Shown: piece after piece, positions 1-56,077 of the stretch
How positions within the stretch are numbered: the stretch's first letter is position 1
Layout: every line of letters begins with the position of its first letter
Assembly: GCA_965644295.1 (NCBI GenBank)
Contig: CBFFRP010000001.1
Coordinates: forward strand, 62,001 to 126,000
From: Paraphysomonas bandaiensis
Lineage: Eukaryota; Protista; Chrysophyceae
DNA length: 64,000 nt
Direction: 5' to 3'
The notes under the pieces: generated by a model
Databases searched by the model: none
Told to the model about the DNA's origin: nothing
What the model saw: the letters and a program-made list of their open reading frames with translations, nothing else
Translations under genes and position numbers: made by a program

Positions 1-3000
1 TTATATACACTAATCTGGTATGCACATATCTTATATACATCATACTAATCTTATATGCACATATCTTTTATGCACATATCTTATATACGCATATCTTATA
101 TGCACATATCTTATATACACATATCTTATATACATCACACTAATCTTATATGCACATATCTTATATACACATATCTTATATACATCACACTAATCTTATA
201 TGCACATATCTTATATACACATATCTTATATACATCACACATATCTTATATGCACATATCTTATATGCACATATCTTATATGCACATAGCTTATATACAC
301 ATATCTTATATACACATATCTTATATACATCACACTAATCTTATATACACATATCTTATATGCACATATCTTATATGCACATATCTTATATGCACATATC
401 TTATATAGACATATCTTATATACACATCTCTTAAATGCACATATCTTATATACACATATCTTATATACATCACACTAATCTTTTATGCACATATCTTATA
501 TACACATATCTTATATACACATATCTTATATACACTAATCTTATATGCACATATCTTATATACACATATCTTATATGCACATATCTTTTATGCACATATC
601 TTATATACACATGTCTTACGTACATCACACTAATCTTATATGCACATATCTTATATGCACATATCTTATATGCACATAGCTTATATACACATATCTTATA
701 TACACATATCTTATATACATCACACTAATCTTATATGCACATATCTTATATACACATATCTTATATGCACATATCTTATATACACATATCTTATATACAC
801 ATATCTTATATACACATATCTTATATGCACATATCTTATATACACATATCTTATATAGACATATCTTATATACACATATCTTATATGCACATATCTTATA
901 TGCACATATCTTATATGCACATATCTTATATACACATCTCTTAAATGCACATATCTTATATACACATATCTTATATACATCACACTAATCTTTTATGCAC
1001 ATATCTTATATACACATATCTTATATACACATATCTTATATACACTAATCTTATATGCACATATCTTATATACACATATCTTATATGCACATATCTTTTA
1101 TGCACATATCTTATATACACATGTCTTATGTACATCACACTAATCTTATATGCACATATCTTATATACACTAATCTTATATGCACATATCTTATATACAC
1201 ATATCTTATATACACATATCTTATATGCACATATCTTATATACATCACACTAATCTTATATGCACATATCTTTTATGCACATATCTTATATACACATATC
1301 TTATGTACATCACACTAATCTTATATGCACATATCTTATATGCACATATCTTATATACACATATCTTATATACATCACACTAATCTTATATGCACTTATC
1401 TTATATACACATATCTTATATGCATCACACTAATCTTATATGCACATATCTTATATACACATATCTTATATGCACATATCTTATATACACATATCTTATA
1501 TACACATATCTTATATGCACATATCTTATATACGCATATCTTAATATACACATATCTTATATACACATATCTTATATAGACATATCTTATATACACATAT
1601 CTTATATACACATATCTTATATGCACATATCTTATATACACATATCTTATATACACATATCTTATATGCACATATCTTATATGCACATATCTTATATAGA
1701 CATATCTTATATACACATATCCTATATGCACATATCTTATATACACATATCTTATATACATCACACTAATCTTATATACACATATCTTATATACACATAT
1801 CTTATATACGCATATCTTATATACATCACACTAATCTTATATGCACATATCTTATATGCACATATCTTATATACACATATCTTATATACACATATCTTAT
1901 ATGCACATATCTTATATGCACATATCTTATATAGACATATCTTATATACACATATCCTATATGCACATATCTTATATACACATATCTTATATACATCACA
2001 CTAATCTTATATACACATATCTTATATACACATATCTTATATACGCATATCTTATATACATCACACTAATCTTATATGCACATATCTTATATGCACATAT
2101 CTTATATGCACATATCTTATATGCACATATCTTATGTACACATATCTTATATACACATATCTTATATTCATCACACTAATCTTATATGCACATATCTTAT
2201 ATACATCACACTAATCTTATATGCACATATCTTATATGCACATGTCTTATATACACATATCTTATATACACATATCTTATATTCATCACACTAATCTTAT
2301 ATGCACATATCTTATATACTCATATCTTATATGCACATATCTTATATAGACATATCTTATATGCACATATCTTATATAGACATATCTTGTATACACATAT
2401 CCTATATGCACATATCTTATATACACATATCTTATATACATCACACTAATCTTATATACACATATCTTATATACACATATCTTATATACGCATATCTTAT
2501 ATACATCACACTAATCTTATATACACATATCTTATATACACATATCTTATATGCACATATCTTATATACACATATCTTATATACACATATCTTATATGCA
2601 CATATCTTATATGCACATATCTTATATAGACATATCTTATATACACATATCCTATATGCACATATCTTATATACACATATCTTATATACATCACACTAAT
2701 CTTATATACACATATCTTATATACACATATCTTATATACATCACACTAATCTTATATGCACATATCTTATATGCACATATCTTATATGCACATGTCTTAT
2801 ATACATCACACTAATCTTATATGCACATATCTTATATACACATATCTTATATTCATCACACTAATCTTATATGCACATATCTTATATACATCACACTAAT
2901 CTTATATGCACATATCTTATATGCACATGTCTTATATACACATATCTTATATACACATATCTTATATTCATCACACTAATCTTATATGCACATATCTTAT

Positions 3001-6000
3001 ATACACATATCTTATATGCACATATCTTATATAGACATATCTTATATAGACATATCTTATATACACATATCTTATATGCACATATCTTATATACACATAT
3101 CTTATATACACATATCTTATATGCACATATCTTATATACACATATCTTATATACACATATCTTATATACACATATCTTATATACACATATCTTATATGCA
3201 CATATCTTATATACACATATCTTATATACACATATCTTATATGCACATATCTTATATACACATATCTTATATGCACATATCTTTTATGCACATATCTTAT
3301 ATACACATATCTTATATACACATATCTTATATGCACATATCTTATATGCACATATCTTATATAGACATATCTTATATACACATATCCTATATGCACATAT
3401 CTTATATACACATATCTTATATACATCACACTAATCTTATATACACATATCTTATATACACATATCTTATATACGCATATCTTATATACATCACACTAAT
3501 CTTATATGCACATATCTTATATGCACATATCTTATATGCACATATCTTATATGCACATATCTTATGTACACATATCTTATATACACATATCTTATATTCA
3601 TCACACTAATCTTATATGCACATATCTTATATACATCACACTAATCTTATATGCACATATCTTATATGCACATGTCTTATATACACATATCTTATATACA
3701 CATATCTTATATTCATCACACTAATCTTATATGCACATATCTTATATACTCATATCTTATATGCACATATCTTATATAGACATATCTTATATGCACATAT
3801 CTTATATAGACATATCTTGTATACACATATCCTATATGCACATATCTTATATACACATATCTTATATACATCACACTAATCTTATATACACATATCTTAT
3901 ATACACATATCTTATATACGCATATCTTATATACATCACACTAATCTTATATACACATATCTTATATACACATATCTTATATGCACATATCTTATATACA
4001 CATATCTTATATACACATATCTTATATGCACATATCTTATATGCACATATCTTATATAGACATATCTTATATACACATATCCTATATGCACATATCTTAT
4101 ATACACATATCTTATATACATCACACTAATCTTATATACACATATCTTATATACACATATCTTATATACATCACACTAATCTTATATGCACATATCTTAT
4201 ATGCACATATCTTATATGCACATGTCTTATATACATCACACTAATCTTATATGCACATATCTTATATACACATATCTTATATTCATCACACTAATCTTAT
4301 ATGCACATATCTTATATACATCACACTAATCTTATATGCACATATCTTATATGCACATGTCTTATATACACATATCTTATATACACATATCTTATATTCA
4401 TCACACTAATCTTATATGCACATATCTTATATACACATATCTTATATGCACATATCTTATATAGACATATCTTATATAGACATATCTTATATACACATAT
4501 CTTATATGCACATATCTTATATACACATATCTTATATACACATATCTTATATGCACATATCTTATATACACATATCTTATATACACATATCTTATATACA
4601 CATATCTTATATACACATATCTTATATGCACATATCTTATATACACATATCTTATATACACATATCTTATATGCACATATCTTATATACACATATCTTAT
4701 ATACACATATCTTATATTCATCACACTAATCTTATATGCACATATCTTATATACACATATCTTATATGCACATATCTTATATAGACATATCTTATATGCA
4801 CATATCTTATATAGACATATCTTGTATACACATATCCTATATGCACATATCTTATATACGCATATCTTATATACATCACACTAATCTTATATGCACATAT
4901 CTTATATGCACATATCTTATATGCACATATCTTATATGCACATATCTTATGTACACATATCTTATATACACATATCTTATATTCATCACACTAATCTTAT
5001 ATGCACATATCTTATATACATCACACTAATCTTATATGCACATATCTTATATGCACATGTCTTATATACACATATCTTATATACACATATCTTATATTCA
5101 TCACACTAATCTTATATGCACATATCTTATATACTCATATCTTATATGCACATATCTTATATAGACATATCTTATATGCACATATCTTATATACACATAT
5201 CTTGTATACACATATCCTATATGCACATATCTTATATACACATATCTTATATACATCACACTAATCTTATATACACATATCTTATATACACATATCTTAT
5301 ATACGCATATCTTATATACATCACACTAATCTTATATACACATATCTTATATACACATATCTTATATGCACATATCTTATATACACATATCTTATATACA
5401 CATATCTTATATGCACATATCTTATATGCACATATCTTATATAGACATATCTTATATACACATATCCTATATGCACATATCTTATATACACATATCTTAT
5501 ATACATCACACTAATCTTATATACACATATCTTATATACACATATCTTATATACATCACACTAGTCTTATATGCACATATCTTATATGCACATATCTTAT
5601 ATGCACATGTCTTATATACATCACACTAATCTTATATGCACATATCTTATATACACATATCTTATATTCATCACACTAATCTTATATGCACATATCTTAT
5701 ATACATCACACTAATCTTATATGCACATATCTTATATGCACATGTCTTATATACACATATCTTATATACACATATCTTATATTCATCACACTAATCTTAT
5801 ATGCACATATCTTATATACACATATCTTATATGCACATATCTTATATAGACATATCTTATATAGACATATCTTATATACACATATCTTATATGCACATAT
5901 CTTATATACACATATCTTATATACACATATCTTATATGCACATATCTTATATACACATATCTTATATACACATATCTTATATACACATATCTTATATACA

Positions 6001-9000
6001 CATATCTTATATGCACATATCTTATATACACATATCTTATATACACATATCTTATATGCACATATCTTATATACACATATCTTATATACACATATCTTAT
6101 ATTCATCACACTAATCTTATATGCACATATCTTATATACACATATCTTATATGCACATATCTTATATAGACATATCTTATATGCACATATCTTATATAGA
6201 CATATCTTGTATACACATATCCTATATGCACATATCTTATATACACATATCTTATATACCTCACACTAATCTTATATACACATATCTTATATACACATAT
6301 CTTATATACGCATATCTTATATACATCACACTAATCTTATATACACATATCTTATATAGACATATCTTATATGCACATATCTTATATACACATATCTTAT
6401 ATACACATATCTTATATGCACATATCTTATATGCACATATCTTATATAGACATATCTTATATACACATATCCTATATGCACATATCTTATATACACATAT
6501 CTTATATACATCACACTAATCTTATATACACATATCTTATATACACATATCTTATATACATCACACTAATCTTATATGCACATATCTTATATGCACATAT
6601 CTTATATGCACATGTCTTATATACATCACACTAATCTTATATGCACATATCTTATATACACATATCTTATATACACATATCTTATATGCACATATCTTAT
6701 ATGCACATATCTTATATAGACATATCTTATATACACATATCCTATATGCACATATCTTATATACACATATCTTATATACATCACACTAATCTTATATACA
6801 CATATCTTATATACACATATCTTATATACATCACACTAATCTTATATGCACATATCTTATATGCACATATCTTATATGCACATGTCTTATATACATCACA
6901 CTAATCTTATATGCACATATCTTATATACACATATCTTATATTCATCACACTAATCTTATATGCACATATCTTATATACATCACACTAATCTTATATGCA
7001 CATATCTTATATGCACATGTCTTATATACACATATCTTATATACACATATCTTATATTCATCACACTAATCTTATATGCACATATCTTATATACACATAT
7101 CTTATATGCACATATCTTATATAGACATATCTTATATAGACATATCTTATATACACATATCTTATATGCACATATCTTATATACACATATCTTATATACA
7201 CATATCTTATATGCACATATCTTATATACACATATCTTATATACATCACACTAATCTTATATGCACATATCTTATATACACATATCTTATATACGCATAT
7301 CTTATATACATCACACTAATCTTATATGCACATATCTTATATGCACATATCTTATATGCACATATCTTATATGCACATGTCTTATATACACATATCTTAT
7401 GTACATCACACTAATCTTATATGCACATATCTTATATTCATCACACTAATCTTTTATGCACATATCTTATATACACATATCTTATATACACATATCTTAT
7501 ATACATCACACATCTCTTATATGCACATATCTTATATACATCACACTAATCTTATATGCACATGTCTTATATACACATATCTTATGTACATCACACTAAT
7601 CTTATATGCACAAATCTTATATACACATATCTTATATTCATCACACTAATCTTATATGCACATATCTTATGTACATCACACTAATCTTATATACACATAT
7701 CTTATATGCACATATCTTATATACACATATCTTATATGCACATATCTTATATACACATATCTTATATACACATATCTTATATGCACATATCTTATATGCA
7801 CATTTCTTATATACACATATCTTATATACACATATCTTATATGCACATATCTTATATGCACATATCTTATATACACATATCTTATATACACATATCTTAT
7901 ATGCACATATCTTATATACACATATCTTATATGCACATATCTTATATACACATATCTTATATACACATATCTTATATACACATATCTTATATACACATAT
8001 CTTATATACACATATCTTATATACACATATCTTATATGCACATATCTTATATGCACATATCTTATATACACATATCTTATATACACATATCTTATATACA
8101 TCACACATCTCTTATATGCACATATCTTATATACATCACACTAATCTTATATGCACATGTCTTATATACACATATCTTATGTACATCACACTAATCTTAT
8201 ATGCACAAATCTTATATACACATATCTTATATTCATCACACTAATCTTATATGCACATATCTTATGTACATCACACTAATCTTATATACACATATCTTAT
8301 ATGCACATATCTTATATACACATATCTTATATGCACATATCTTATATACACATATCTTATATACACATATCTTATATGCACATATCTTATATGCACATTT
8401 CTTATATACACATATCTTATATACACATATCTTATATACACATATCTTATATGCACATATCTTATATGCACATATCTTATATGCACATATCTTATATGCA
8501 CATATCTTATATGCACATGTCTTATATACATCACACTAATCTTATATGCACATATCTTATATACACATATCTTATATTCATCACACTAATCTTATATGCA
8601 CATATCTTATATACATCACACTAATCTTATATGCACATATCTTATATGCACATGTCTTATATACACATATCTTATATACACATATCTTATATTCATCACA
8701 CTAATCTTATATGCACATATCTTATATACACATATCTTATATGCACATATCTTATATAGACATATCTTATATAGACATATCTTATATACACATATCTTAT
8801 ATGCACATATCTTATATACACATATCTTATATACACATATCTTATATGCACATATCTTATATACACATATCTTATATACACATATCTTATATACACATAT
8901 CTTATATACACATATCTTATATGCACATATCTTATATACACATATCTTATATACACATATCTTATATGCACATATCTTATATACACATATCTTATATACA

Positions 9001-11185
9001 CATATCTTATATTCATCACACTAATCTTATATGCACATATCTTATATACACATATCTTATATGCACATATCTTATATAGACATATCTTATATGCACATAT
9101 CTTATATAGACATATCTTGTATACACATATCCTATATGCACATATCTTATATACACATATCTTATATACCTCACACTAATCTTATATACACATATCTTAT
9201 ATACACATATCTTATATACGCATATCTTATATACATCACACTAATCTTATATACACATATCTTATATAGACATATCTTATATGCACATATCTTATATACA
9301 CATATCTTATATACACATATCTTATATGCACATATCTTATATGCACATATCTTATATAGACATATCTTATATACACATATCCTATATGCACATATCTTAT
9401 ATACACATATCTTATATACATCACACTAATCTTATATACACATATCTTATATACACATATCTTATATACATCACACTAATCTTATATGCACATATCTTAT
9501 ATGCACATATCTTATATGCACATGTCTTATATACATCACACTAATCTTATATGCACATATCTTATATACACATATCTTATATACACATATCTTATATGCA
9601 CATATCTTATATGCACATATCTTATATAGACATATCTTATATACACATATCCTATATGCACATATCTTATATACACATATCTTATATACATCACACTAAT
9701 CTTATATACACATATCTTATATACACATATCTTATATACATCACACTAATCTTATATGCACATATCTTATATGCACATATCTTATATGCACATGTCTTAT
9801 ATACATCACACTAATCTTATATGCACATATCTTATATACACATATCTTATATTCATCACACTAATCTTATATGCACATATCTTATATACATCACACTAAT
9901 CTTATATGCACATATCTTATATGCACATGTCTTATATACACATATCTTATATACACATATCTTATATTCATCACACTAATCTTATATGCACATATCTTAT
10001 ATACACATATCTTATATGCACATATCTTATATAGACATATCTTATATAGACATATCTTATATACACATATCTTATATGCACATATCTTATATACACATAT
10101 CTTATATACACATATCTTATATGCACATATCTTATATACACATATCTTATATACATCACACTAATCTTATATGCACATATCTTATATACACATATCTTAT
10201 ATACGCATATCTTATATACATCACACTAATCTTATATGCACATATCTTATATGCACATATCTTATATGCACATATCTTATATGCACATGTCTTATATACA
10301 CATATCTTATGTACATCACACTAATCTTATATGCACATATCTTATATTCATCACACTAATCTTTTATGCACATATCTTATATACACATATCTTATATACA
10401 CATATCTTATATACATCACACATCTCTTATATGCACATATCTTATATACATCACACTAATCTTATATGCACATGTCTTATATACACATATCTTATGTACA
10501 TCACACTAATCTTATATGCACAAATCTTATATACACATATCTTATATTCATCACACTAATCTTATATGCACATATCTTATGTACATCACACTAATCTTAT
10601 ATACACATATCTTATATGCACATATCTTATATACACATATCTTATATGCACATATCTTATATACACATATCTTATATACACATATCTTATATGCACATAT
10701 CTTATATGCACATTTCTTATATACACATATCTTATATACACATATCTTATATGCACATATCTTATATGCACATATCTTATATACACATATCTTATATACA
10801 CATATCTTATATGCACATATCTTATATACACATATCTTATATGCACATATCTTATATACACATATCTTATATACACATATCTTATATACACATATCTTAT
10901 ATACACATATCTTATATACACATATCTTATATACACATATCTTATATGCACATATCTTATATGCACATATCTTATATACACATATCTTATATACACATAT
11001 CTTATATGCACATATCTTATATACACATATCTTATATGCACATATCTTATATACACATATCTTATATACACATATCTTATATGCACATATCTTATATGCA
11101 CATATCTTATATACACATATCTTATATACACATATCTTATATGCACATATCTTATATACACATATCTTATATACACATATCTTAT
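1..11185. repeat. Satellite array of 15-bp units CATATCTTATAT(A/G)CA with interspersed 20-bp variant units containing CATCACACTAAT; higher-order duplications; open at the left edge
   Basis: Directly visible tandem units. Identical or near-identical spurious ORF translations recur at offsets of +510, +1430, +1385, +270, +595 and +2910 bp, showing nested block duplications. Confidence 0.99.
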
Positions 11186-42420: not shown

Positions 42421-44769
42421 ATGGATAATGCGGATGGGAAAGTAAACAGCAGTGAAACGCCTGATAAGAAGTATGATGCCAGTGAGACGAAGACAGACAA
42501 TAAGAGTGATAGTAAGCGTGTTGATGAGTTGAAATCAGAGGGAAAACAGGGACAGAATAGTTCAGATTCGAAGCGTATTGATGATGATATTAACTCTCTG
42601 TTTGAGAAAGGTGACACTCCGTGTGTTACATATATGTATATGTGTATAGAGGGATGTATACACGTACATGTATGTCACATATGTATATATACTTATATGG
42701 ATACTGTATAAGATTGATAGATACATATACTGTATATGTATGCTATGTATGGATTATATTATGATGCATATCTCGCAGGAGATGGATCCGAGAACGACAC
42801 GTTATCTAGAAACCACCCTCTTGCTGAATTTTTAAAGGAGAACAAAGGGATGTTAAAGGGATTATCACAAGAGGAATTTAAGGCCAAATATAGCGCCTAT
42901 ATGAAGGATTTGGAAGATAAAAGTAGTGCGCCTGCCAAACCAGAACACAGACGATCAGATTCTGCGGATATAAACAGGGGAATAGCGTCCGTGTTGGCCG
43001 AAGATGAATCTAAAGACTTCCTGGATAAGATCGTTCTGAAGTTTACAACAATGTCCGAGGCCAACTCCGAGGCGCCGTCCTTTACGGTGGGTACAAAGGG
43101 GGCGAAGATTGGGCGAGATCAGAGCAACGAAGTTTGTGTTCCTTCAGATACACGACTCGCCCACGAGGGCCACTCTTTCATTGAGCACTCTGACGGTAGC
43201 TTTTACCTACTTGATGGGGGTTACGACTTCTCGGCTAGCATCCGTATCAGTGTAGGTGTTAAGAAGAAGGAGTGGATTATGATGCCGAAGGCAAGATTTT
43301 CTGCGGGGAATTCAGTTTTCGAGAGCAATGGGCTCACTCCTGAAGGCAATCTTATGCTTGAAGTGATAGAGGGACCTCTAAAGGGTGAGCGTCGGGTTGT
43401 GACGAAAAAAGGGGCGAGTCTCGGTCGATCCTCTGACAACATCATTGCTATTCCAGACCGTGAACTCTCAAGGCGGCATTCTAGAGTAGAATGGGACGAG
43501 AAGTTGGGGGAGTACTGTGTGTGCGATATCGGTAGCACCAACGGTACGTACATGCAGTTGGTGGGCCCATACGCAGGTCGGTATAAGCTCTGTATTAATG
43601 ACCACATACTTGTCGGGCGCACTGGGTTTTCTATCAACAGGTTCGATTACGGTCTGTCTGAGGAAATTGGGCATCGGCAGACTATGGAAGACAGTTGTAC
43701 TATTGTCCAGCACATGGACTTGCCCGGACTCAACATTCAGAATCTTGCGCCACAATCATTCTTTGGAGTGTTCGATGGGCATGGAGGCTCCAATGCTTCG
43801 CTGTACCTCTCCCAAAACCTGCACACAAATGTCGGAGAAGCATTATTATCCCGTAGTGAGGAACTTCGATCGTTAATGACAGACATCGATGCTGGGGACA
43901 ATGACGACACTCACCCACTCAAGGAAAGACTGGACCGCATTGTAATTGATGCACTCGAAACTTCTTTTCTCAAGACGGACCACGAGTTCGTCACCACCTC
44001 GGAGCACGCGCAGAACGGATCCACAGCCACCACTGCTCTCGTTCTGGGCAAGCGACTCTATTGCGCTAATGTCGGTGACTCTCGATCGATGCTTTGCCGA
44101 CGTTTTGCCCCAAAACCAATGTCAGAGGACCACAAGCCAACACGGGAGGATGAGCAAAAGCGCATTAGAGATGCAGGTGGCTTCGTGATAAACAACAGGG
44201 TTATGGGCGAACTCGCGGTGTCACGTGCTTTTGGGGATGCTGAATTCAAGAAAGGAATTCAGGTTTGCGTCGATCATATTTTCGTGTGGTCTTACAATTC
44301 GCGCGTCTATGTTTTCGTAGAGTATCATTGACGAGGAGGGCGTAAAAATGTCAACCACAGGCAGCACAGGTAGTGGGGACGATGGTGAGGGAAAAGATAC
44401 CAAGAACTGGGACCAGCCACTCATCATTGCTAAACCCGATGTAGAGGTATGCAAGGTATTCATTGCTGTTTGTAGCGCTCACTTTGTTGCAGACCACTAC
44501 TCTTACAGACGACGACCAGTTCCTTCTGCTGGCATGTGATGGGTTATTCGACGTTTTTACGGAACAGGAGGTGGTTGACTTTGTAAAGCACAATATGGAA
44601 GAGCATGGTGATGCGCAGAAGTGCTGTGAGGTGGGTTCCTCGGGTATCTCATTTGTCAAATACCCTTACCACTCTTTCCTTGTAGAACATCACGGATGTG
44701 GCAATCAACAAGCGGAACTCTCGAGACAATGTATCAGTTATCCTAATCATCCTCAATAAGTGGTATTAG
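42421..44769 (+). CDS. FHA-FHA-PP2C protein phosphatase; exons ~42421-42610, 42779-44262, 44321-44446, 44493-44630, 44686-44769
   Basis: FHA motifs KIGRDQSN..H and LGRSSDN..LSRRH..DIGSTNGT. PP2C motifs RQTMED, FFGVFDGHGG, ANVGDSR, DHKP, LAVSRAFGD, LLACDGLFD and SRDNVS. Confidence 0.93.
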
Positions 44770-48140: not shown

Positions 48141-48569
48141 TAGTCTTTATCTCTGCTAGTTTGGTGACGAACAATGATAATCTGATTCATGGTTGTGTTC
48201 ATTGTATGTCAGTGAAACTAACGCAGGAATAAACACCAACATCACACACACAAAATATACGAAGAATGGTTTGATTTTCAGCCTTCGATACATCCTGTGT
48301 TGAAACATAAATAATGACTGTCCATAGTATATGCTTTTACATCTCATACAAAGAGTATTTGTCTACAGATCATTGAAACAAGCATTCCAATGAAAGATAT
48401 AAATGAAATATCTATACTTCAAACTTTTTCTTATATTTTTATACTTGCCACCATAAACCATATAACCTAGAATTTCTTAGTCAGTATAAATAGGTACCAT
48501 AGATTTAAAAAATGTCGAATAAATAGATCGAATGGTACCGGGTTACTTCCGAGTACTCACTGACGTTGT

Positions 48570-51500
48570 CTACGCAGCTACATTCGTGACAAGTCGAATG
48601 AACTTTTTCCTTGGAATTGCTTTTAAGAGTGGTGCAAGCTGGTCAATATGCTCTGACTCGATATCTGCTAGATCCGCGCCGGAATAAACTCCCCAGTCTT
48701 CAAGCAATGCCGTCATCGCGGCACGATCGGAAACAAATTTATCGTCACTTAAGATTTCCCATGCTTCTGAGAAACTATTTTTCGAACTGCCTGCGTCGGC
48801 ACTGGGCACATTACCATTTAACAGAGAGGGGTCAGTTTCGCGTACGTCAGTTGGAATCGAGCGAAGAACTTCCACTGCTCGGCCAGCACATTCCGTCACA
48901 ACTCTTTGCGGTGGGATTTCCCATGATGAAAAGTATAAAAACTTTAGCATCGCAGATATTACGTCACAAAGACTCCGCTGCATAAAGTTTTCAGTGGATA
49001 TTGGAATATTACCATCGCAAAGCATTTTAGACGCTAGATCGAGCGTGGCGGCAGGACATAAATCAGGTAGACATGAGAGTATATCTGGGCCAGATATTCT
49101 TTCTATGGTTATTACTTCGTACCCATCTGAATTTTCAGTTTTCACCCTGTTGCCAAACATAAGGGGAAGAATAGCCTGTAACTTTGATTTATCCGAGTGG
49201 TAGCACTCAATGCCAATTATCCACTCCAACAACAAATTATCTACTTTCGCAGGATCATGGGAGAACATACGTTGTAGGCCATCACTCGACACAACTGGCA
49301 GCATGACGGTCGAGTTTATGAGGGCTTTGGCGAAATCCATATCAAACCTCCGTCCTGTTTTCAGCCTCTTTTTGTCCAAAAACACTTCTATTGCCCGGTT
49401 ATCATTACCAACACTATGATTAGTAAACATATCGAACAACACCGATACAAATGTATCGTCATGTAAACCCCATCGATAAGATACGAAAAAATCATATTCC
49501 GATCGGAGATCATATAGTTGCAACCATGGTTCATACAGGCGACGAACGTCTTCATCCGATAGCAACTTTCTTCCCCCAGGTTTGTTTAAAACAGAGCGAC
49601 TAGAAGCCACCTCACGCAATTGATTAAGTGGGATCAAAATACCAGCACTTGCCGTTTCGGAAGATAGAGTTGACACGTCACCTTCGTGGTTCGAAACCGT
49701 GTCACAGTCATAATATAGTGCAGAGAAACAGCGCAAAGACTTCATACATTCCTTCATCACAGCCCGTATTAACTCAATCATTCTATCATGTACTGCCAGA
49801 GGGTTTTTGCCTTCTGCATCTAATCGGATGCAATTCATGTCATCATAGGCAGTCAGACGAAAGCGCTGCCTTCCGAAAGACATAATGGCAACATTACGAT
49901 ACAAACCAACATTCCTGATATTAAACTGCGAATTATGAGAAGTTGCCTGACACCATACTACACTCTTGCCTATGATGCGTTCAAATAAGCCACTCGGAAG
50001 AAAGCCATACGTTTTTAGGTCGCCAGCTGTAATGGTGGTATAAGATTCAAAATCTGAAAATGAGGTGAATACAATGTAACAGCTAGTATACGATGACTGC
50101 GTCCACTGCATGAAATCTGCATCACTAAGATTCGCCAAAGGTAGTAACGCCGGAACCAGGTACTGTTTATTGGCTGACGGTGATTGATCGGAATTTGCTA
50201 CCTGGTCTATGCCTTCGTCGTTGTCAACATTTAGAGGAATTAGCAAACCAAACTTTATCATCAGCTTTAATAGAGTAGGGGATTCCTCAGAGAAGTCCCT
50301 CCAAAGAATAGGCAGCAATTTATCGCTCAACAAACCATTTTGGGACAGCATGAGCCATTCGTTGTAGTGTCGCCTATTGCACTCTTTGTGGACATCAAGG
50401 ACATGATGTGTAGGGTCATTGAGATCAGGTATATGTTTGCATATAATATGGGTCGCAGGAGTTACTAAGTATGACACCGCATCAAGAATGACAACTTCTC
50501 CTAACCCTGGCTCATCGTGCCACAAAACCATACCCATTTCATGCAGAAACAGAAGAAAGTAGCGAACATCATACCCCGTAATGCCACTTTCCGCTGCCAG
50601 CTGTGCAACAGTGTCGAGGGACAGACATGATTTCTTTTGGGCTTGTATAGCATCCAGCGTTTTTAGCCACTTCAATGGGACTAATTTGTGTGTGCAGAAA
50701 TCGTCGTCCATCGCCTTCTCCGCTACTGTGAGAAGTCTCTTTACTGTAGGATCATCGCGTCCTTGAGTATTGTCCACAGGAAAAAACCAGAATGTCGTTG
50801 TGCCCCTAGTCCCCTGTCCCTCTGTATTCTCGAGCACAGAGGGCCAAGCCTTGCATCGCGCGAATTCCTCAAACAGCATTGTGGATATCTTTTCGTGGTC
50901 TCCTGGATCCTTGATAATATCTTTACGAGTTCCTACAAGGGCAATAGGAGCAGTTGTACCCAAGTTAGAATCAAAGGTATGCACGATTATAGAGTTTATC
51001 CAGAATTTCAAATACGCCAGACACTGTAACTTGATATCTTCGGTGGATAAAAGCCACTCCATATTAAAGACTAACAGGTACACACCATTATGGGTCAAAA
51101 ATAGATGATGAATAACGTTGAATATGCTCTGACCGCCGTAATCAAAAACTGATATGATCAAGCTGGACTCCTCTGATGTAAAATCTGAGAGAAGTTTCAT
51201 AACTAGCTCCGCATTGAGTCCGTCATTCAGACCAGTCTCCACCACTCCAGCCCCAGCATTTCCGTCGTCCTTAGCTGGTTTCCCTTGCTCAACTGCGCGA
51301 ACAGCAACTGCTGATGGAGGTTCAACCAGCAAATCCGTATCCTGTTCCTCTTCAACAGTTTCACGCTCAAAATGTGCGGGCAACTGCTCTGTAGTGTTTG
51401 CATCTGTGGCACTCGCAAGTAACACCTCTGATTCCTTCTCAGCCTTTTTCTGTTGCTCTTCCATTCGACGCTGTGACGCCACTAGAGCAGCGATTGCAGC

Positions 51501-53201
51501 CTCTAGCTCTTTCTCCGGTTTTTGGTAAGCATCCCACGAACCTTGACCACCCCGACTGGCGTAACTGACATCGCACGTGAGTTGGTTAATCCCAATCGTA
51601 GATTCAGTTTGTTGAAAAGATTTCCCTACGATGCTGTTGGCGAGAGCAGTTTTCCCAGCCCGCCCTTCCCCCACAATCATGATTCTACTACGACCCCACT
51701 CTTTACTGCCTTGCTGAAGGGCTGCCTGAATAGGATCTACACCAGCTGCTGAACTGCTCAATCCATCGTCAACTACATTGACATGTATGAGAAATAAGAT
51801 CACATAGATGCACTAATACTCACACTTGATATCAAAGTTAAAGGTAGGATCTATTTCCTTCATAGCCTGACGTGCTGCCAGATGGAATGCGCCCTCGACA
51901 TTCACACCTCTCTTAGAAGAGACCTCTACGAAGGGACACGAAAGCTCTTCGGCAAGATCCTACGAATCATAAGGGCAACAGAGAGTGATTAAAGCTATTG
52001 TTTAATACCTTTCCTTCTTGTGTAGACACTGAACGGTCAGACAAGTCACTCTTAAGTCCAACCAGGACAGTTGCACAGTTGGATGCCGCATACCTATACA
52101 GCAGTTAGTACCTATCAATACAAACACATCGACTGACTTTTCTTTTTCTTCCTTCCATGTTGACTTTACATTATCAAATGAGGAACGATCAGTGACACTA
52201 TAAGTCATTATGATCGCATGGGCTCCTTTGTATACAGCTGAAGTTGTCGCTCTAAAGTTCTCAGCCCCTGCTGTGTCCCACTGACACAGGATGTTATACA
52301 GCTATCAGTATATTAACTTTCATATACTCACAATCTGAAGTTTGAAGTTTTTGTTGCTTAAAGACACTCTTTTCACTTTCTGTTGGACAGTAGGAGCAGC
52401 AGATACATGAGAATAGAGTAGGAGTTAGTGTGAGAGGTACGTACAAAGTCAACCCCAATAGTCGTGACCCAGTTATCATCGAAGGCATTATCATTGTATT
52501 TATTCAGTAGGCATGTTTTTCCAACACCAGAATCACCGATCAATATGATCTTCAGTAGTTTCTCCTCATTGCTGTATGATAATATTACAAGTATGCAGTA
52601 ATCCGCATGTGCTAACTATGATATGATACACAGTCAGTGGGGATATGTACGTATCTATCCATATACACATATGATGTATGTACGTGGCATCATATGAGAT
52701 CAACTGTATTATACTATACATAAATACCATATACATATCATAGTGTATACACGATACTATGGGTGGTGTATTACCCGTCATCTGCTACTGGCACCAACAA
52801 CGGCTGTGGAGCACGGGACCTACCAGACGTCTTTTTACTACACATACCATATACATATCAAAGGTATACACGATACTATGGGTGTGTTACCCGTCATCTG
52901 CTGTTGGTACCAACAACGGCTCTGGAGCACGGGACCTGCCAGACGTCTTTATACTACACACACACATACCATATACATATCATAGTGTATACACGATACT
53001 ATTGGTGTTACCCGTCATCTGCTACTGGCACCAACAACGGCTCTGGAGCACGAGACCTACCAGATGTCTTTATACTACACATATAACCATATCAAAGGTA
53101 TACACGATACTATGGGTGTGTTACCCGTCATCTGCTGTTGGCACCAACAACGGCTCTGGAGCACGGGACCTGCCAGACTTCTTCTTCTTCGCTTTCGACA
53201 T
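48570..53201 (-). CDS. Rab-like GTPase fused to Roc-COR, TIR and a C-terminal SAM-like domain; 7 exons, the last 51772-48570
   Basis: Exon 1 [10 protein letters not shown]. Rab motifs [30 protein letters not shown] and EVSSK. A 51-nt intron (51823-51773) joins in frame to Roc motifs [19 protein letters not shown] and VGTRKD, then COR ([18 protein letters not shown]) and TIR (FFVSYRW, VFLD, LLEW). Confidence 0.8.
52726..53180. repeat. ~118-bp tandem repeat x4 (ABAB) in intron 1 of the Rab-Roco gene
   Basis: Core TATACACGATACTAT...TTACCCGTCATCTGCT...CCAACAACGGCT(C/G)TGGAGCACG(G/A)GACCT(A/G)CCAGA occurs four times. Confidence 0.95.
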
Positions 53202-53744
53202 AGCTTACGAGCAACTATCTATACAATGAATTCGATTGACTGCGAACGACTGGCGTACTTCAGCGTGAGGTGTGTGTCAGGTGTGTGTATCATCTCGTGA
53301 TAGATACTCCTGCGCGCAGATGTGCAGCAGCTGCTCCTGCGTACGCACACATACATATTCATAATACGTTATACAGTCTAGACGTTATACAGCAAAGTCT
53401 GGAAGAAGTTGTATAAGATATACAGTGGTATACCATATATACGGCCTGTATATACAAGCATGCTGCTGTAGAGCACAGAGGTATGCAGCATACAAAGAGG
53501 CAGTGTACTATATGGAATACAGTGTACCGGTATACCGGTATTGCGGTACAGCAAAACTCTGTGTGTATCCAAGTACACTACGTACCCCTCTAACATACAC
53601 TCAGATGCATCGATCCACATACATACATGCATATATTGCTGCTGGCTGATCATAGACACGAACCCACTGTCACAATAGCAATATCTAACCTGTTGCTACA
53701 TAAACCACCCCTCATTTGCAATAATATCAAGAGATTTAACTGGA

Positions 53745-56077
53745 ATGGAGCCTCCAGAGTCTGTTGGAAGCATTCCTGCCTCAATGGGGCTTCAAAATCT
53801 CCAGGTTTTAATTTCATATAGTGTGCAATGGAATGATTTTCATGTGATAGAGTGAGCCTATGAGACTGACTGCAGAAGCAGAGAGATTGAATGATGAACT
53901 AGATACGTTAGTCATGGACAACTTTCGAGTATTTGTCGAGAACTTGACATGTTCAGGTGTATTGCGCGGCGAGGTACACACTTTTCATATGATATATTCC
54001 ATCTCATGAGATATGAAGGATAAAAAACTACGCGACTACTCCTCTGATCTTGGTGATGATCTTCAACAGCTTTTAGATCTCTGTGGATCATTTCGAGATC
54101 GTGTGAATCAGTATATTACAGGTTTTACTGGACTCTAAATTATGATAATCTATGACCTGATTTCGCAGCACATAAACGAAACAGAAAGACTCTCAAGCAC
54201 AATATGCAGCTCGTTGAGCTCTTAGAGATTCCTCAATTAGTTGATGCATGTTCTCGGAATGGGTTTCACGACGAAGCGCTCGAATTGGCATTGTTCGTTA
54301 ATGGGTTGGAGCGCAAACATATATTCGCAAGTGAAGTACGAGACCACAGCGATGGTACCCCTCGTCAAAGTGGAGGAAATAGCGTCGTGCAGAGCATCGT
54401 CAATGATGTTCATACAACACTTTCTGACCTTCGTAGACAACTACTTGTGCGTTTATCTGTTGAGTCGTCTTTGCCAAAGCTTCTCCAGGTTCTCTCCGCA
54501 CTTAGAAAGTTAGATGGAATTTTAGCTGACCGTCAGTTATCACTGGAACGCCAAAATGGTTTTTACACTCCATCTCTTACTGATCAGCAAGCAGAAGAAG
54601 TCCGAGCTGGCCTGATGCGCAGGATAGAGACTTCCCTGCAGATGAGTTTTCTGGAAGCCAGGGGTGTATGGGTAGAAAGTATGCTGCAAGGCGTTCAAGA
54701 CGAGGCTACCGGTACATATAGCACAGCTACTCATCAGTCAGATTCAACAACCCTAGGTCCATATGGACGCGGAATTGAGATCCTAGAAGTGTATAGGTCA
54801 TCGTGGTTTGCTGTGGTAACTCAGTTCAATGCTTTATTTGGTTCAGCTGATGGCGGGGAAGTCTCCCCGTCGTCACTACTGTCACGGTGGATAGAGTCCC
54901 AGCTAAATTCATTGGTGAAAGAGTTAGAAGTCATTCTAAAAGATATTGATGAGGTGCGCTCATTACGAAGTATTACTTTATGTTTTTCATGGATCATGCC
55001 AGGGTCAATCTGTTCGATCGCTATTAGAGCAGTCTTTCCTGTTCGCCTCTAGAATGTCAGAAGTAGGTTGTGACTTCCGGTCCCATATATTACCTGTATT
55101 CGAATCGGCTGTTGTATGTCGTGTTGAAGACATTTGGAGGAAAGGATTGGATATCTTCAAACAGATGGTGGTCACGGAGAAGTATGCCGTGGATGGGAAT
55201 GCGGACGAGCTGCCAAGAGAGCAGGTGTAGTTTATCGTGTATCTTGAAGTTTTGACATCGTATAGTTTGAAATATGTATGAGTCGATTAATGTATCGGAC
55301 TCTATCGCAACGCTATCCTGTATATGTTATAATCAGTCTACCTATTGTTGTACACAGGTAATACCGCTGTACCTGCGGCAGGACACAGAGGATTCCTCTG
55401 CTTCTGATAATGCCGGCGCCGACTCTGACTCGCACCCGCCACCCCAGGGCCTTATTGGCTTTCCTCCGTTGGCTTATCTGATGAATACTCATCTAGTAGG
55501 ACTTAACTTTTTGAGAGACTGTCCATTGGCCTCTGTAGAGGGGCGTGTGCGGGAGGCTCTGGATCTGCTATTGAGCGACACTTGTAAGTTCTTGGTGAGT
55601 GTGAGTGACGACATTCGACGTTCTGGGCGGAAGTATATATCTGCAGACTCTTCGTCAAGTGGTTTGTTGACTGCGGACTCGATGGATAGACTATATGCAG
55701 AGGCGATAACGAAAGACTTGATTCAGCATTCACTTTGGTGTTTTCAATCTGTTTATACCAATGTCACTCTTCCATCCAAGTCTGGAGCCACACCACCGTT
55801 AGATTCCAGTTTACTTAAAATTAGTGAACATTGCAGGAGAATATTCGAGAAAGCCGACTTAGTGAAAGCTTCACAAGCAATTCCAAGTAAGAAACCTGTG
55901 CTAGCTGTACCATCAACCAGCGATGTCGCTAAGACTGAGGAATTATCGTCAGAAAAAAATTCTGTAAAGCAAGAAAATGCGAACAAGTTAGTGTCAAAGG
56001 AAAGTGGCGAAGATAAAAATATGGAAAGCGAATCTCGCGAAAGTAGACACGATCTCACTGATTCGAATGTAATCTGA
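53745..56077 (+). CDS. COG8: Conserved oligomeric Golgi complex subunit 8 (Dor1 family), multi-exon
   Basis: QLVELLEIPQLVDACSRNGFHDEALEL, FAVVTQFNALF, SRMSEVGCDFR and LIGFPPLAYLMN...LNFLRDC. The start ATG is inferred. Confidence 0.92.

What the first reader, a model, noticed from the sequence alone, without database searches (positions are those of the whole stretch)
48570..53201. Rab-like GTPase fused to Roc-COR-TIR-SAM-like domains: candidate protist immune receptor with an integrated Rab decoy
Seen: six short exons encode a complete Rab1/8-like G domain. It splices in frame (GTGAGT...TAG, 51 nt) onto a ~1070-codon exon with Roc, COR, a TIR domain retaining the Glu in LLEW, and a SAM-like tail (LLEDWGV...DL...LKAIPRKKF). 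The big exon has no ATG before the Roc P-loop strand, so it needs upstream exons. Established: Roco proteins usually carry LRR/ANK sensor repeats N-terminal to Roc; TIR domains with this Glu can be NADases activated by oligomerisation (SARM1, plant TNLs); bacterial effectors such as those of Legionella target Rab1. Inference: two GTPase domains in tandem, with the Rab in the sensor position, fits an integrated-decoy receptor that triggers TIR signalling when a Rab-targeting effector acts on it.
Basis: partly seen in the sequence, partly recalled or inferred. Interest (0 to 1): 0.85.

Follow-up and report, generated by a model that had tools for sequence, protein, structure and literature searches.

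The report
Rab-like bait on Roco-TIR switch
A marine protist transcribes one gene that joins a catalytically crippled copy of the trafficking GTPase Rab1 to a Roc-COR GTPase switch and an enzyme-type TIR domain; its relatives carry other host-protein copies in the same place, so it looks like an untested bait-type immune or death sensor.

Summary
The central observation holds. Spliced RNA contigs from two studies, plus an independent 1314-aa database protein, join the Rab exons in frame to the large Roc-COR-TIR exon across the predicted 51-nt intron.

Two details are wrong:
- Exon 1 runs to 53125, not 53170. It is followed by up to three 63-nt repeat exons.
- The C-terminal tail is a confident five-helix bundle, but it could not be shown to be SAM.

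Domain evidence:
- The Rab part is closest to Rab1 but reads DTAGAE and GLKSD. The genome's own Rab1 keeps DTAGQE and GNKSD.
- The TIR folds like plant TNL and SARM1 TIRs. Its invariant Glu aligns with SARM1 E642.

Family evidence:
- Cores up to 73-75% identical carry Rab, actin, C2 or kinase modules. Slightly more distant cores carry Hsp70 or CDC48-N, and one in another clade carries kinesin.
- Rab-bearing cores are not one clade.
- The actin, Hsp70 and kinesin modules also lack catalytic residues.

This strengthens a bait reading, but no ligand, NADase activity or infection link is shown.

The scan flagged the same family twice before on other DNA of this genome (a BBS5 fusion and a TIR-SAM Roco). 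I found no paper describing these fusions.

The parts
53125..53274 (-). Exon 1: 5' UTR (at least 73 nt) and start codon at 53201-53199. It encodes [26 protein letters not shown] and ends in codon phase 2.
   Evidence: RNA contig X1 record 3 covers 53274..53125 joined to 52953. Sequence read. The N-terminus of P0001 is identical.
52724..53183 (.). Tandem DNA array, period about 118-121 nt, 3.9 copies. Each unit is one 63-nt exon plus a short intron.
   Evidence: Tandem Repeats Finder. Exon and intron borders. The DNA contig of X17 lacks one unit (skips 111 nt).
53012..53074 (-). Repeat exon (63 nt, phase 2 to 2), encodes (G)[20 protein letters not shown].
   Evidence: Acceptor tgtag| and donor gacgg|gtaac. 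The joint 53012 to 52571 in X1 is ambiguous with 52775, because the last 30 nt of the units are alike.
52891..52953 (-). Repeat exon (63 nt), encodes (G)[20 protein letters not shown].
   Evidence: Joint 53125|52953 in X1 and X4 contigs. Matches P0001 residues 27-47.
52775..52837 (-). Repeat exon (63 nt), encodes (G)[20 protein letters not shown].
   Evidence: X1 record 2 and X4 record 8 lie on 52775..52838. Borders. P0001 has the variant [20 protein letters not shown].
52445..52571 (-). Rab exon A: P-loop GDSGVGKT and switch I through TTIGVDF.
   Evidence: sequence. X1 contig piece 52445..52571. Pfam Ras on P0001 residues 75-235.
52332..52379 (-). Rab exon B: [16 protein letters not shown] (interswitch).
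   Evidence: Joints 52280|52332 and 52379|52445 in X1. Borders.
52138..52280 (-). Rab exon C: switch II reads WDTAGAENF, so the catalytic Gln is replaced by Ala.
   Evidence: Alignment to Rab1 structures. The genome's own Rab1 has DTAGQERF.
52009..52093 (-). Rab exon D: G4 motif reads GLKSD in place of GNKxD.
   Evidence: Joints in X1, X4 and the polyA metatranscriptome X6. Alignment.
51824..51959 (-). Rab exon E: last helix. It ends ...FDIK plus one base, with no Cys prenylation tail.
   Evidence: X1 and X4 contig pieces 51824..51958.
51773..51823 (-). 51-nt GT..AG intron between the Rab part and the Roco part. It contains the in-frame stop that would end a stand-alone Rab.
   Evidence: Joint 51772|51824 in X1 and X4 with 135 nt on the shorter side.
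50760..51686 (-). Roc G domain: GEGRAGKT, a switch I Thr, an acidic insertion of about 140 aa, DYGGQ and TRKD.
   Evidence: Pfam Roc 43.9 bits against cut-off 27. Motif coordinates.
49580..50687 (-). COR region. The COR-A match covers the first 66-70 residues; the rest is conserved across the family.
   Evidence: Pfam COR-A 39.5 bits against cut-off 35.3. Family alignments cover 88-98% of the exon.
48840..49577 (-). Extended TIR domain (P0001 residues 980-1225). The catalytic-type Glu1097 lies at 49226-49224.
   Evidence: Model pLDDT 89. Foldseek top hits are RPP1, RPS4, RUN1, SNC1 and SARM1 TIRs. The family profile matches the SARM1 TIR at E 2e-6 with Glu on E642. The Glu is invariant in 48 of 48.
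48573..48806 (-). C-terminal five-helix tail (P0001 residues 1237-1314). Fold kinship unresolved.
   Evidence: Model pLDDT 86. No significant match. No SAM by Pfam or hhalign.
48447..48572 (-). Stop codon (48572-48570) and 3' UTR to the end of the RNA contigs.
   Evidence: ORF end. X1 and X4 contigs end at 48447.

Best explanation
Shown:
- One mRNA encodes a protein of about 1314-1335 aa. Its parts are basic/Pro-rich 21-aa repeats, a Rab1-derived G domain, Roc, COR, a TIR with the catalytic-type Glu, and a small helical tail.
- The Rab part is a copy of a Rab1-type gene. It has lost the catalytic Gln, the guanine-specifying Asn and any lipid anchor.
- The Roc domain keeps all its nucleotide motifs.
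- The Roc-COR-TIR exon is under strong purifying selection between strains.

Inferred:
- The protein is a three-part sensor. The Rab-like module is a bait that mimics the cell's Rab1. Something that binds or modifies Rab1 (a viral or bacterial factor) would engage it.
- That engagement would release or flip the Roc-COR switch, bringing the TIR domains together.
- The assembled TIRs would cleave NAD+ or make a nucleotide signal, leading to arrest or death of the infected cell.
- The helical tail may aid self-association, because it stands where true SAM domains stand in relatives.
For: Transcript:
- Spliced contigs and P0001.

Rab module:
- Rab1 is the nearest solved relative.
- The module reads DTAGAE and GLKSD; the genome's own Rab1 reads DTAGQE and GNKSD. 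Introns are shared after GVDF, after KLQI and before the last exon.
- Two other Rab-Roco fusions also lack the Gln: WVASGH in L020 and DTPGDR/GTKCD in L022.

Roc and TIR:
- Roc motifs are intact.
- TIR fold and Glu.

Family:
- 179 hits, or 363 clusters at E<=1e-30.
- N-terminal modules include actin, Hsp70, kinesin, four C2 domains, CDC48-N, kinase, TPR and ANK. This genome also has a BBS5 fusion.
- Cores 73-75% identical carry different modules. Rab-bearing cores are not one clade (AU p 9e-7).

Catalytic residues in other modules (residue roles from my own knowledge):
- Actin: Q137D, D157A, H161R.
- Hsp70: K71I, E175S.
- Kinesin: switch II DLAGSE reads NLAGAE.

Selection and context:
- 20 synonymous against 1 non-synonymous strain differences in the big exon.
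- TIR genes with this Glu respond to virus infection in another microalga (PMC12489294).
Against: - No pathogen, ligand, NADase activity, oligomer or infection-linked expression is shown for this protein or any relative.
- The Rab1 residues that known bacterial effectors modify are not kept. By my count against Rab1b, Ser76 is Ala, Tyr77 is Val and Thr72 is Ala.
- One Rab-Roc-COR relative (P0167) has an intact Rab, and the kinase module of P0075 keeps HRD and DFG. So not all modules are dead.
- This genome has only three Roc-COR-TIR genes, unlike expanded receptor repertoires.
- Many family members show no N-terminal module, although many of those are ORFs cut at introns.
- TIR_2 scores below Pfam's cut-off in this protein (20-22 bits against 28).
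- The AU test group was named after seeing a first tree.
Confidence: 0.5

Rival explanations
1. The Rab-like module is a working targeting or regulatory domain. It would dock the protein on Rab1 partners (GEFs, tethers, effectors at the ER-Golgi interface). The Roc-COR-TIR part would then act as a housekeeping signalling enzyme tied to trafficking, not as a pathogen sensor.
For: RabF1 (IGVDF) and RabF2 (KLQIW), the P-loop and the switch I Thr are kept. Other modules (actin, kinesin, C2, BBS5) are also cytoskeleton or trafficking proteins. One relative has an intact Rab. Only three paralogues exist in this genome. The gene is expressed in ordinary cultures and in marine polyA metatranscriptomes.
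Against: There is no prenylation motif, so it cannot sit on membranes as Rabs do. The catalytic Gln and the NKxD Asn are lost here, and the Gln is lost in two further fusions. Whole actin or Hsp70 copies with dead active sites are odd targeting devices. Closely related cores swap unrelated modules.
Confidence: 0.22
2. The Rab-like domain is an internal partner of Roc. Two G domains in tandem would regulate each other by dimerising, as in GTPases activated by dimerisation. No outside ligand would be needed, and the N-terminal variety in the family would reflect different built-in regulators.
For: Two G domains lie about 30 residues apart. Roco proteins are known to cycle through G-domain and COR dimers (my own knowledge; reviewed in the paper cited as Wauters 2019 in PMC7159879).
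Against: The place is taken by non-GTPase modules in close relatives: actin, C2 and kinase within the nearest clade, Hsp70 slightly further out. The Rab-like nucleotide motifs are degenerate in different ways in three fusions, which argues against a conserved catalytic partnership. No interface was tested.
Confidence: 0.12
3. The TIR is a scaffold rather than an enzyme, as in animal TLR adaptors. The protein would assemble a signalling platform without cleaving NAD+.
For: Pfam TIR_2 is below its cut-off. The domain is about 245 residues long with large inserts relative to known TIRs.
Against: The Glu is invariant in 48 of 48 and aligns with the catalytic Glu of SARM1. The best fold matches are enzymatic TIRs.
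Confidence: 0.1
4. Two separate genes: a small Rab that ends at the in-intron stop (…FDIKCEY*) and a Roco gene with its own start. The fusion would be an assembly artefact.
For: The unspliced reading does give a stop 3 codons into the intron. Contigs cannot exclude a minor intron-retaining form.
Against: Contigs from two studies and an independent database protein carry the spliced join with all other introns removed. The big exon has no ATG before the P-loop strand. A Rab ending in CEY lacks any prenylation motif. Relatives P0068 and P0071 have the last Rab exon and Roc in one uninterrupted ORF.
Confidence: 0.01

Closest known systems
Plant NLRs with integrated domains (NLR-IDs such as RRS1-WRKY, RGA5-HMA, Pik-1-HMA) and TNL resistosomes
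   Same: Both have three-part logic: a variable integrated copy of a host protein, a nucleotide switch and a TIR effector with the catalytic Glu. The integrated domain differs between close paralogues. The best fold matches of this TIR are TNL TIRs.
   Different: The switch here is a Roc-COR GTPase, not an NB-ARC ATPase. The TIR is C-terminal and the integrated module N-terminal. There are no LRRs. No effector, genetics or resistosome is known. The lineage is a marine protist.
SARM1 (ARM-SAM-SAM-TIR NADase)
   Same: The TIR has its Glu aligned to E642. A small helical domain lies next to the TIR. Relatives carry true SAM there. An autoinhibited enzyme released by a sensor domain is the proposed logic in both.
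   Different: In this family the SAM or tail lies after the TIR, not before it. This protein's tail is not demonstrably SAM. It has a Roc-COR switch instead of an NAD/NMN-sensing ARM domain.
Roco proteins: LRRK2, DAPK1, C. tepidum Roco, Ectocarpus LRR-ROCO, Chondrus TPR-ROCO-TIR (PMC11378527)
   Same: It has the Roc-COR tandem above Pfam cut-offs. ROCO genes are already proposed as algal immune receptors. A ROCO-TIR combination is on record for a red alga. Repeat exons in symmetric phase recall the exon-shuffled LRR exons of brown-algal ROCOs.
   Different: The N-terminal sensor here is a whole copy of a host protein (Rab1-like; actin, Hsp70 or kinesin in relatives), not LRR, ANK or TPR repeats. 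There is no kinase. The paper reports at most four ROCOs per diatom or oomycete and does not describe these fusions.
Bacterial AP-GTPase (Roc-COR) conflict systems (PMC8195603, PMC7159879)
   Same: A Roc-COR GTPase acts as the central switch between a fast-evolving N-terminal sensor and a variable C-terminal effector position. TIR is common among the effector domains of these conflict systems.
   Different: The bacterial sensors are LRRs. This protein is eukaryotic, its gene has introns, and it carries eukaryotic host-protein copies.
Rab1/Ypt1 small GTPases
   Same: About 45-55% identity over the whole G domain (by eye from the alignments). RabF1 and RabF2 motifs are kept. Three intron positions are shared with the genome's own Rab1.
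   Different: The catalytic Gln is Ala, the NKxD Asn is Leu, the switch II residues of RabF3 and RabF4 are changed, and there is no hypervariable tail or Cys motif. It is an internal domain of a protein of about 1300 aa.

Membership tests
Roco proteins | Roc G domain directly followed by a COR domain | tested here: met
   Pfam Roc 43.9 bits (cut-off 27) and COR-A 39.5 bits (cut-off 35.3) on the big exon. G1 GEGRAGKT, G3 DYGGQ and G4 TRKD are present.
Roco proteins | COR-B / dimerisation part of COR | not tested
   No Pfam COR-B hit was listed for P0001. The region is conserved in the family but was not modelled.
Rab GTPases | Ras-superfamily fold with Rab family motifs (RabF1-F5) | tested here: inconclusive
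   Pfam Ras E 1e-60, full length. Rab1 is the best solved relative. IGVDF and KLQIW are kept. RabF3-F5 are altered (NFRATT, VYKGA, MTYSVT). The motif definitions come from my own knowledge.
Rab GTPases | Catalytic Gln in DTAGQE and guanine-specific NKxD | tested here: not met
   DTAGAE and GLKSD. The genome's own Rab1 has DTAGQE and GNKSD.
Rab GTPases | C-terminal Cys prenylation motif | tested here: not met
   The domain continues into Roc by splicing. Even the unspliced reading ends in CEY, which is not a CC, CXC or CAAX motif.
Enzymatic TIR domains (SARM1 / plant TNL / Thoeris type) | TIR fold | tested here: met
   Model pLDDT 89. Foldseek probability 1.00 to RPP1, RPS4, RUN1, SNC1 and SARM1 TIRs, E 1e-4 to 2e-2, TM by target 0.6-0.72. 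Pfam TIR_2 is below its cut-off in this protein but hits 40 of 48 relatives at E<=0.01.
Enzymatic TIR domains (SARM1 / plant TNL / Thoeris type) | Catalytic Glu in the alpha-C region | tested here: met
   E1097 (LLEW) is invariant in 48 of 48. In the profile alignment it falls on the Glu of SARM1 'WVHKEIV', which is E642 by my knowledge.
Enzymatic TIR domains (SARM1 / plant TNL / Thoeris type) | NAD+ cleavage or nucleotide-signal synthesis on oligomerisation | not testable with these tools
   Needs biochemistry.
SAM domain | Sequence or fold match to SAM | tested here: inconclusive
   No Pfam SAM hit. hhalign against the true SAM tails of relatives gave probability 2%. Foldseek PDB best E 0.8, with SAM entries only at TM 0.3-0.45. 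VIA-align wide search Z<=6.7 with no SAM in the top 50. Atlas shape search TM<=0.5. Language-model hits to SAM clusters scored 0.76-0.80, below the level that means anything.
Integrated-decoy receptors (NLR-ID concept) | Integrated domain is a copy of a host protein | tested here: met
   The module is Rab1-like and shares three intron positions with the resident Rab1 gene.
Integrated-decoy receptors (NLR-ID concept) | Integrated domain varies among close relatives on a conserved switch-effector chassis | tested here: met
   One starred clade, with cores up to 73-75% identical, holds Rab, kinase, C2 and actin modules. CDC48-N and Hsp70 lie in the next clades out.
Integrated-decoy receptors (NLR-ID concept) | The host original is a pathogen target, and binding or modification of the decoy activates the receptor | not testable with these tools
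   No pathogen or effector is known for this organism.
Integrated-decoy receptors (NLR-ID concept) | NB-ARC/NACHT (STAND) central ATPase | tested here: not met
   The central module is Roc-COR. NB-ARC appears only at E 0.11 on the P-loop. The protein may work like an NLR-ID but is not an NLR.

The most novel reading that the evidence does not exclude
Marine protists possess a family-wide bait system built on a GTPase chassis. Roc-COR-TIR proteins would carry catalytically dead copies of the cell's own NTPases and trafficking proteins (Rab1, actin, Hsp70, kinesin, BBS5). These copies would act as integrated decoys for viral or bacterial factors. This would be an independent invention of the plant NLR-ID strategy, with this Rab fusion as one of at least two separate Rab acquisitions.
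Probability: 0.4. Interest if true: 0.85.

Novelty: new variant of a known kind. Interest (0 to 1): 0.68.

Why it matters
Almost nothing is known about how unicellular marine eukaryotes sense intracellular parasites. A 2025 study states that TIR-based antiviral systems had not been described in microalgae (PMC12489294).

If these Roc-COR-TIR proteins are bait receptors, three things follow:
- The integrated-decoy principle would have arisen outside plants, on a different switch.
- The modules would serve as a ready list of host proteins that protist pathogens attack: Rab1, actin, Hsp70, kinesin.
- There would be a tractable link between Roco GTPases and TIR enzymology.

The claim is directly testable with a NADase assay and with module-swap experiments.

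Tried and rejected
- **SAM identity of the tail.** I tried Pfam, hhalign against the true SAM tails of relatives, Foldseek PDB, VIA-align wide, Atlas shape and Atlas features. None was significant, so I dropped 'SAM-like' as a finding.
RNA contigs use 53125, so I rejected it.
- **Separate-genes reading.** Rejected.
- **Single origin of the Rab fusions.** Rejected by the tree and the AU test. The caveat is that the group was named after a first tree.
- **Third paralogue (contig C239).** ORF inspection did not resolve its N-terminal module.
- **Literature.** Five full-text searches found ROCO candidate receptors in brown algae, one mention of TPR-ROCO-TIR, and bacterial AP-GTPase systems. Nothing described Rab-, actin- or Hsp70-Roco-TIR fusions. 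The library is incomplete, so absence is not proof.
- **Complex prediction.** I did not run complex prediction, because no specific binding claim is made.
- **Joined exons.** Exons were handled by reference. The full-length product was studied through the database protein P0001, which the homology search returned.


Full report
**The gene and its transcript**

The ORF listing gives a 1077-codon open frame on the minus strand, 51803-48570. Reading the minus strand upstream of it shows five short exons that spell a small GTPase.

Public runs hold this stretch. When four of them were laid on 48400-53400:
- X17 gave an unspliced contig, so it is genomic DNA.
- X1 (3896 nt) and X4 (3637 nt), from different studies, gave minus-strand contigs with all introns removed. 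The pieces are 48447-51772 | 51824-51958 | 52008-52091 | 52136-52280 | 52332-52379 | 52445-52571.
- Every skipped piece ends CT..AC on the plus strand, which is GT..AG on the gene's strand.
- The polyA metatranscriptome X6 also carries the 51958|52008 join.

After GT-AG adjustment the exons are 52571-52445, 52379-52332, 52280-52138, 52093-52009, 51959-51824 and 51772-48570.

The last Rab exon ends with one base (T). The big exon supplies TT, giving ...FDIK-F-DDG.

The tool labels X1 'probably DNA', but a contig lacking every intron of a gene whose DNA copies keep them is a transcript. X1, X4 and X17 share the same differences from the window, so they are one lineage and not independent organisms.

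**Independent full-length product**

The homology search with the big exon (by reference) returned P0001. It is 1314 aa, lies on a 4161-nt JGI contig, and is reported as 100% identical over the exon. Its sequence runs from MSKAKKKK through the Rab part into Roc-COR-TIR.

I used P0001 as the reference for the whole protein.

- Contig X1 record 3 covers 53274-53125 and joins 53125 to 52953. Exon 1 (ATG at 53201) therefore ends at the donor gacgg|gtaac at 53125, not at 53170.
- The region 52724-53183 is a tandem array of about 118-121-nt units.
- Each unit holds a 63-nt exon in phase 2-2: 53074-53012, 52953-52891 and 52837-52775. Each exon encodes a 21-aa repeat, (G)[20 protein letters not shown].
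- The window has four units counting exon 1. P0001 has three. The X17 DNA contig lacks about one unit (skips 111 nt). The number of repeats therefore varies between strains.
- The function of the repeat is unknown.

**Domains**

*Pfam on P0001.*
- Ras: residues 75-235, E 1e-60, covering the whole profile.
- COR-A: residues 613-678.
- TIR_2: residues 1009-1122, E 8e-4, below its cut-off.
- On the exon alone, Roc scores 43.9 bits and COR-A 39.5 bits. Both are above their cut-offs.

*The Rab part.*
- It is nearest to Rab1 structures (E 1e-52 to 1e-47), then Sec4/Ypt1 and Rab8.
- Its switch II reads WDTAGAENF, so the catalytic Gln is Ala.
- Its G4 motif reads GLKSD, so the Asn is Leu.
- It has no Cys tail.
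- By my count against Rab1b, the positions modified by known effectors or by LRRK2 (Thr72, Ser76, Tyr77) are Ala, Ala and Val.

*The Roc domain.* It keeps [13 protein letters not shown] and TRKD.

*The C-terminal 335 residues.*
- They were modelled with 48 relatives at mean pLDDT 89.
- Foldseek ranks plant TNL TIRs (RPP1, RPS4, RUN1, SNC1, L6) and SARM1 at the top.
- The family profile finds the SARM1 TIR at E 2e-6. It places the invariant Glu (E1097, window 49226-49224) on the Glu of SARM1's WVHKEIV, the catalytic E642.

*The last 78 residues.*
- They form a confident five-helix bundle, pLDDT 86.
- They gave no SAM match by Pfam, by hhalign against true SAM tails of relatives (probability 2%), or by fold searches.
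- In other family members a genuine SAM stands at the same place. The tail may do a similar job, but that is a guess.

**Origin of the Rab module**

In the same genome, canonical Rab1 genes (L018, L019) read DTAGQERF and GNKSD. They have introns after GVDF, after KLQI and before the last exon. These are the same three places as in the fused module. The module is therefore a genomic copy of a Rab1-type gene, not a retrocopy.

Two other Roc-COR-TIR proteins, P0068 and P0071, begin with the last Rab exon in the same ORF as Roc. Their contigs hold the upstream Rab exons:
- One reads WVASGH and keeps NKSD.
- The other reads DTPGDR and GTKCD.

Three fusions have therefore each lost the catalytic Gln, each in a different way. 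A distant Rab-Roc-COR protein, P0167, keeps an intact Rab.

**The family**

The big exon finds 179 proteins. The TIR-tail profile finds 363 clusters at E<=1e-30 among 1.84 billion representatives. Named hits come from a chrysophyte; most are unnamed marine or metagenome contigs.

Modules found N-terminal to Roc:
- actin (E 6e-112)
- Hsp70 (E 2e-184)
- kinesin
- four C2 domains
- CDC48-N
- a CaMK-like kinase
- TPR, ANK, SAM and WW

Two members add an ADP-ribosyltransferase domain after the TIR.

This genome has three Roc-COR-TIR genes and one TIR-only ORF. One of the three is the BBS5 fusion with a SAM tail that the scan reported before.

A tree of 104 cores puts Rab, kinase, C2 and actin carriers into one starred clade, with cores up to 75% identical. 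CDC48-N and Hsp70 carriers lie in the next clades out. The window's protein sits in a different major clade from the other two Rab carriers. Holding the three together costs 425 log-likelihood units (AU p 9e-7). The group was chosen after seeing the first tree. Modules have therefore been exchanged repeatedly, and Rab was taken up at least twice or moved between cores.

**Dead active sites recur in other modules**

Residue roles here are from my own knowledge.
- The actin module of P0057 resembles conventional actin closely (phmmer E 6e-160; roughly three quarters identical by eye) but has Q137D, D157A and H161R.
- The Hsp70 module of P0072 is close to Hsc70 (E 2e-159) but has K71I and E175S.
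- The kinesin module reads NLAGAE for DLAGSE and CTRGH for SSRSH.
- The kinase module keeps HRD and DFG.

The pattern is a well-kept surface with a broken nucleotide-hydrolysis site. It fits mimics better than working enzymes, but it is not universal.

**Selection**

Between the window and the strain of X1/X17, the big exon has 20 synonymous changes and 1 non-synonymous change. The non-synonymous one lies in the acidic Roc insertion. The last Rab exon has 2 changes, both non-synonymous, which is too few to interpret. The gene is clearly functional.

**Reading**

The evidence supports a sensor-switch-effector protein with three parts:
- a variable N-terminal host-protein copy
- an intact Roc-COR GTPase
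- an enzyme-type TIR, with a small helical or SAM domain behind it

The bait reading is the best fit, at about 0.5. It rests on architecture and comparison only.

The main rival is a trafficking-linked signalling enzyme in which the module serves for docking, at about 0.2.

The literature knows the following:
- ROCO genes as candidate algal receptors, and one TPR-ROCO-TIR (PMC11378527)
- Roc-COR switches in bacterial conflict systems (PMC8195603, PMC7159879)
- virus-responsive TIR genes in a haptophyte (PMC12489294)

I found no description of these host-protein fusions.

The scan itself flagged the same family twice on other DNA of this genome.

Noticed in passing
window 1-10500: AT-rich satellite (GC 0.24, GC skew about -0.73) made of short units resembling ATATCTTATATRCAC. 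It ends near 10-12 kb.
   Followed up: no
window 52724-53183: The tandem array is an exon-intron cassette: a 63-nt exon encoding a 21-aa basic/Pro-rich repeat. Copy number differs between strains. The window has 4 units; P0001 has 3 and the X17 DNA contig appears to lack about one unit. The function of the repeat is unknown.
   Followed up: partly
P0057, P0072, P0018 (family members, not in the window): The actin, Hsp70 and kinesin modules fused to Roc-COR-TIR cores lack key hydrolysis residues. Actin has Q137D, D157A and H161R. Hsp70 has K71I and E175S. Kinesin has a degenerate switch II. The rest of the actin and Hsp70 modules stays close to the canonical proteins; the kinesin module is highly divergent. 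The CaMK-like module of P0075 keeps HRD and DFG.
   Followed up: partly
P0088, P0095: Two family members carry an NAD:arginine ADP-ribosyltransferase (ART) domain after the TIR, a second NAD-using effector.
   Followed up: no
L008 = G000:C277:165861-169532: A 319-aa ORF matches only the TIR part of the family profile (E 4.5e-16). It is a possible stand-alone TIR gene in the same genome.
   Followed up: no
L003/L004/L023 = G000:C239:157500-166287: This is the third Roc-COR-TIR paralogue of the genome. ORF inspection did not identify its upstream exons or N-terminal module.
   Followed up: partly
window 54204-55052 (+) and 42736-44331 (+): Neighbouring genes: a Dor1/COG8-like Golgi complex subunit lies upstream on the opposite strand, in divergent orientation to this gene (E 2.5e-22). 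An FHA-PP2C phosphatase lies downstream (E 5e-44). No link to the finding is evident.
   Followed up: no
window 48573-51959: Strain differences: 20 synonymous against 1 non-synonymous in the Roc-COR-TIR exon, and 2 of 2 non-synonymous in the last Rab exon (E to K, D to E).
   Followed up: partly
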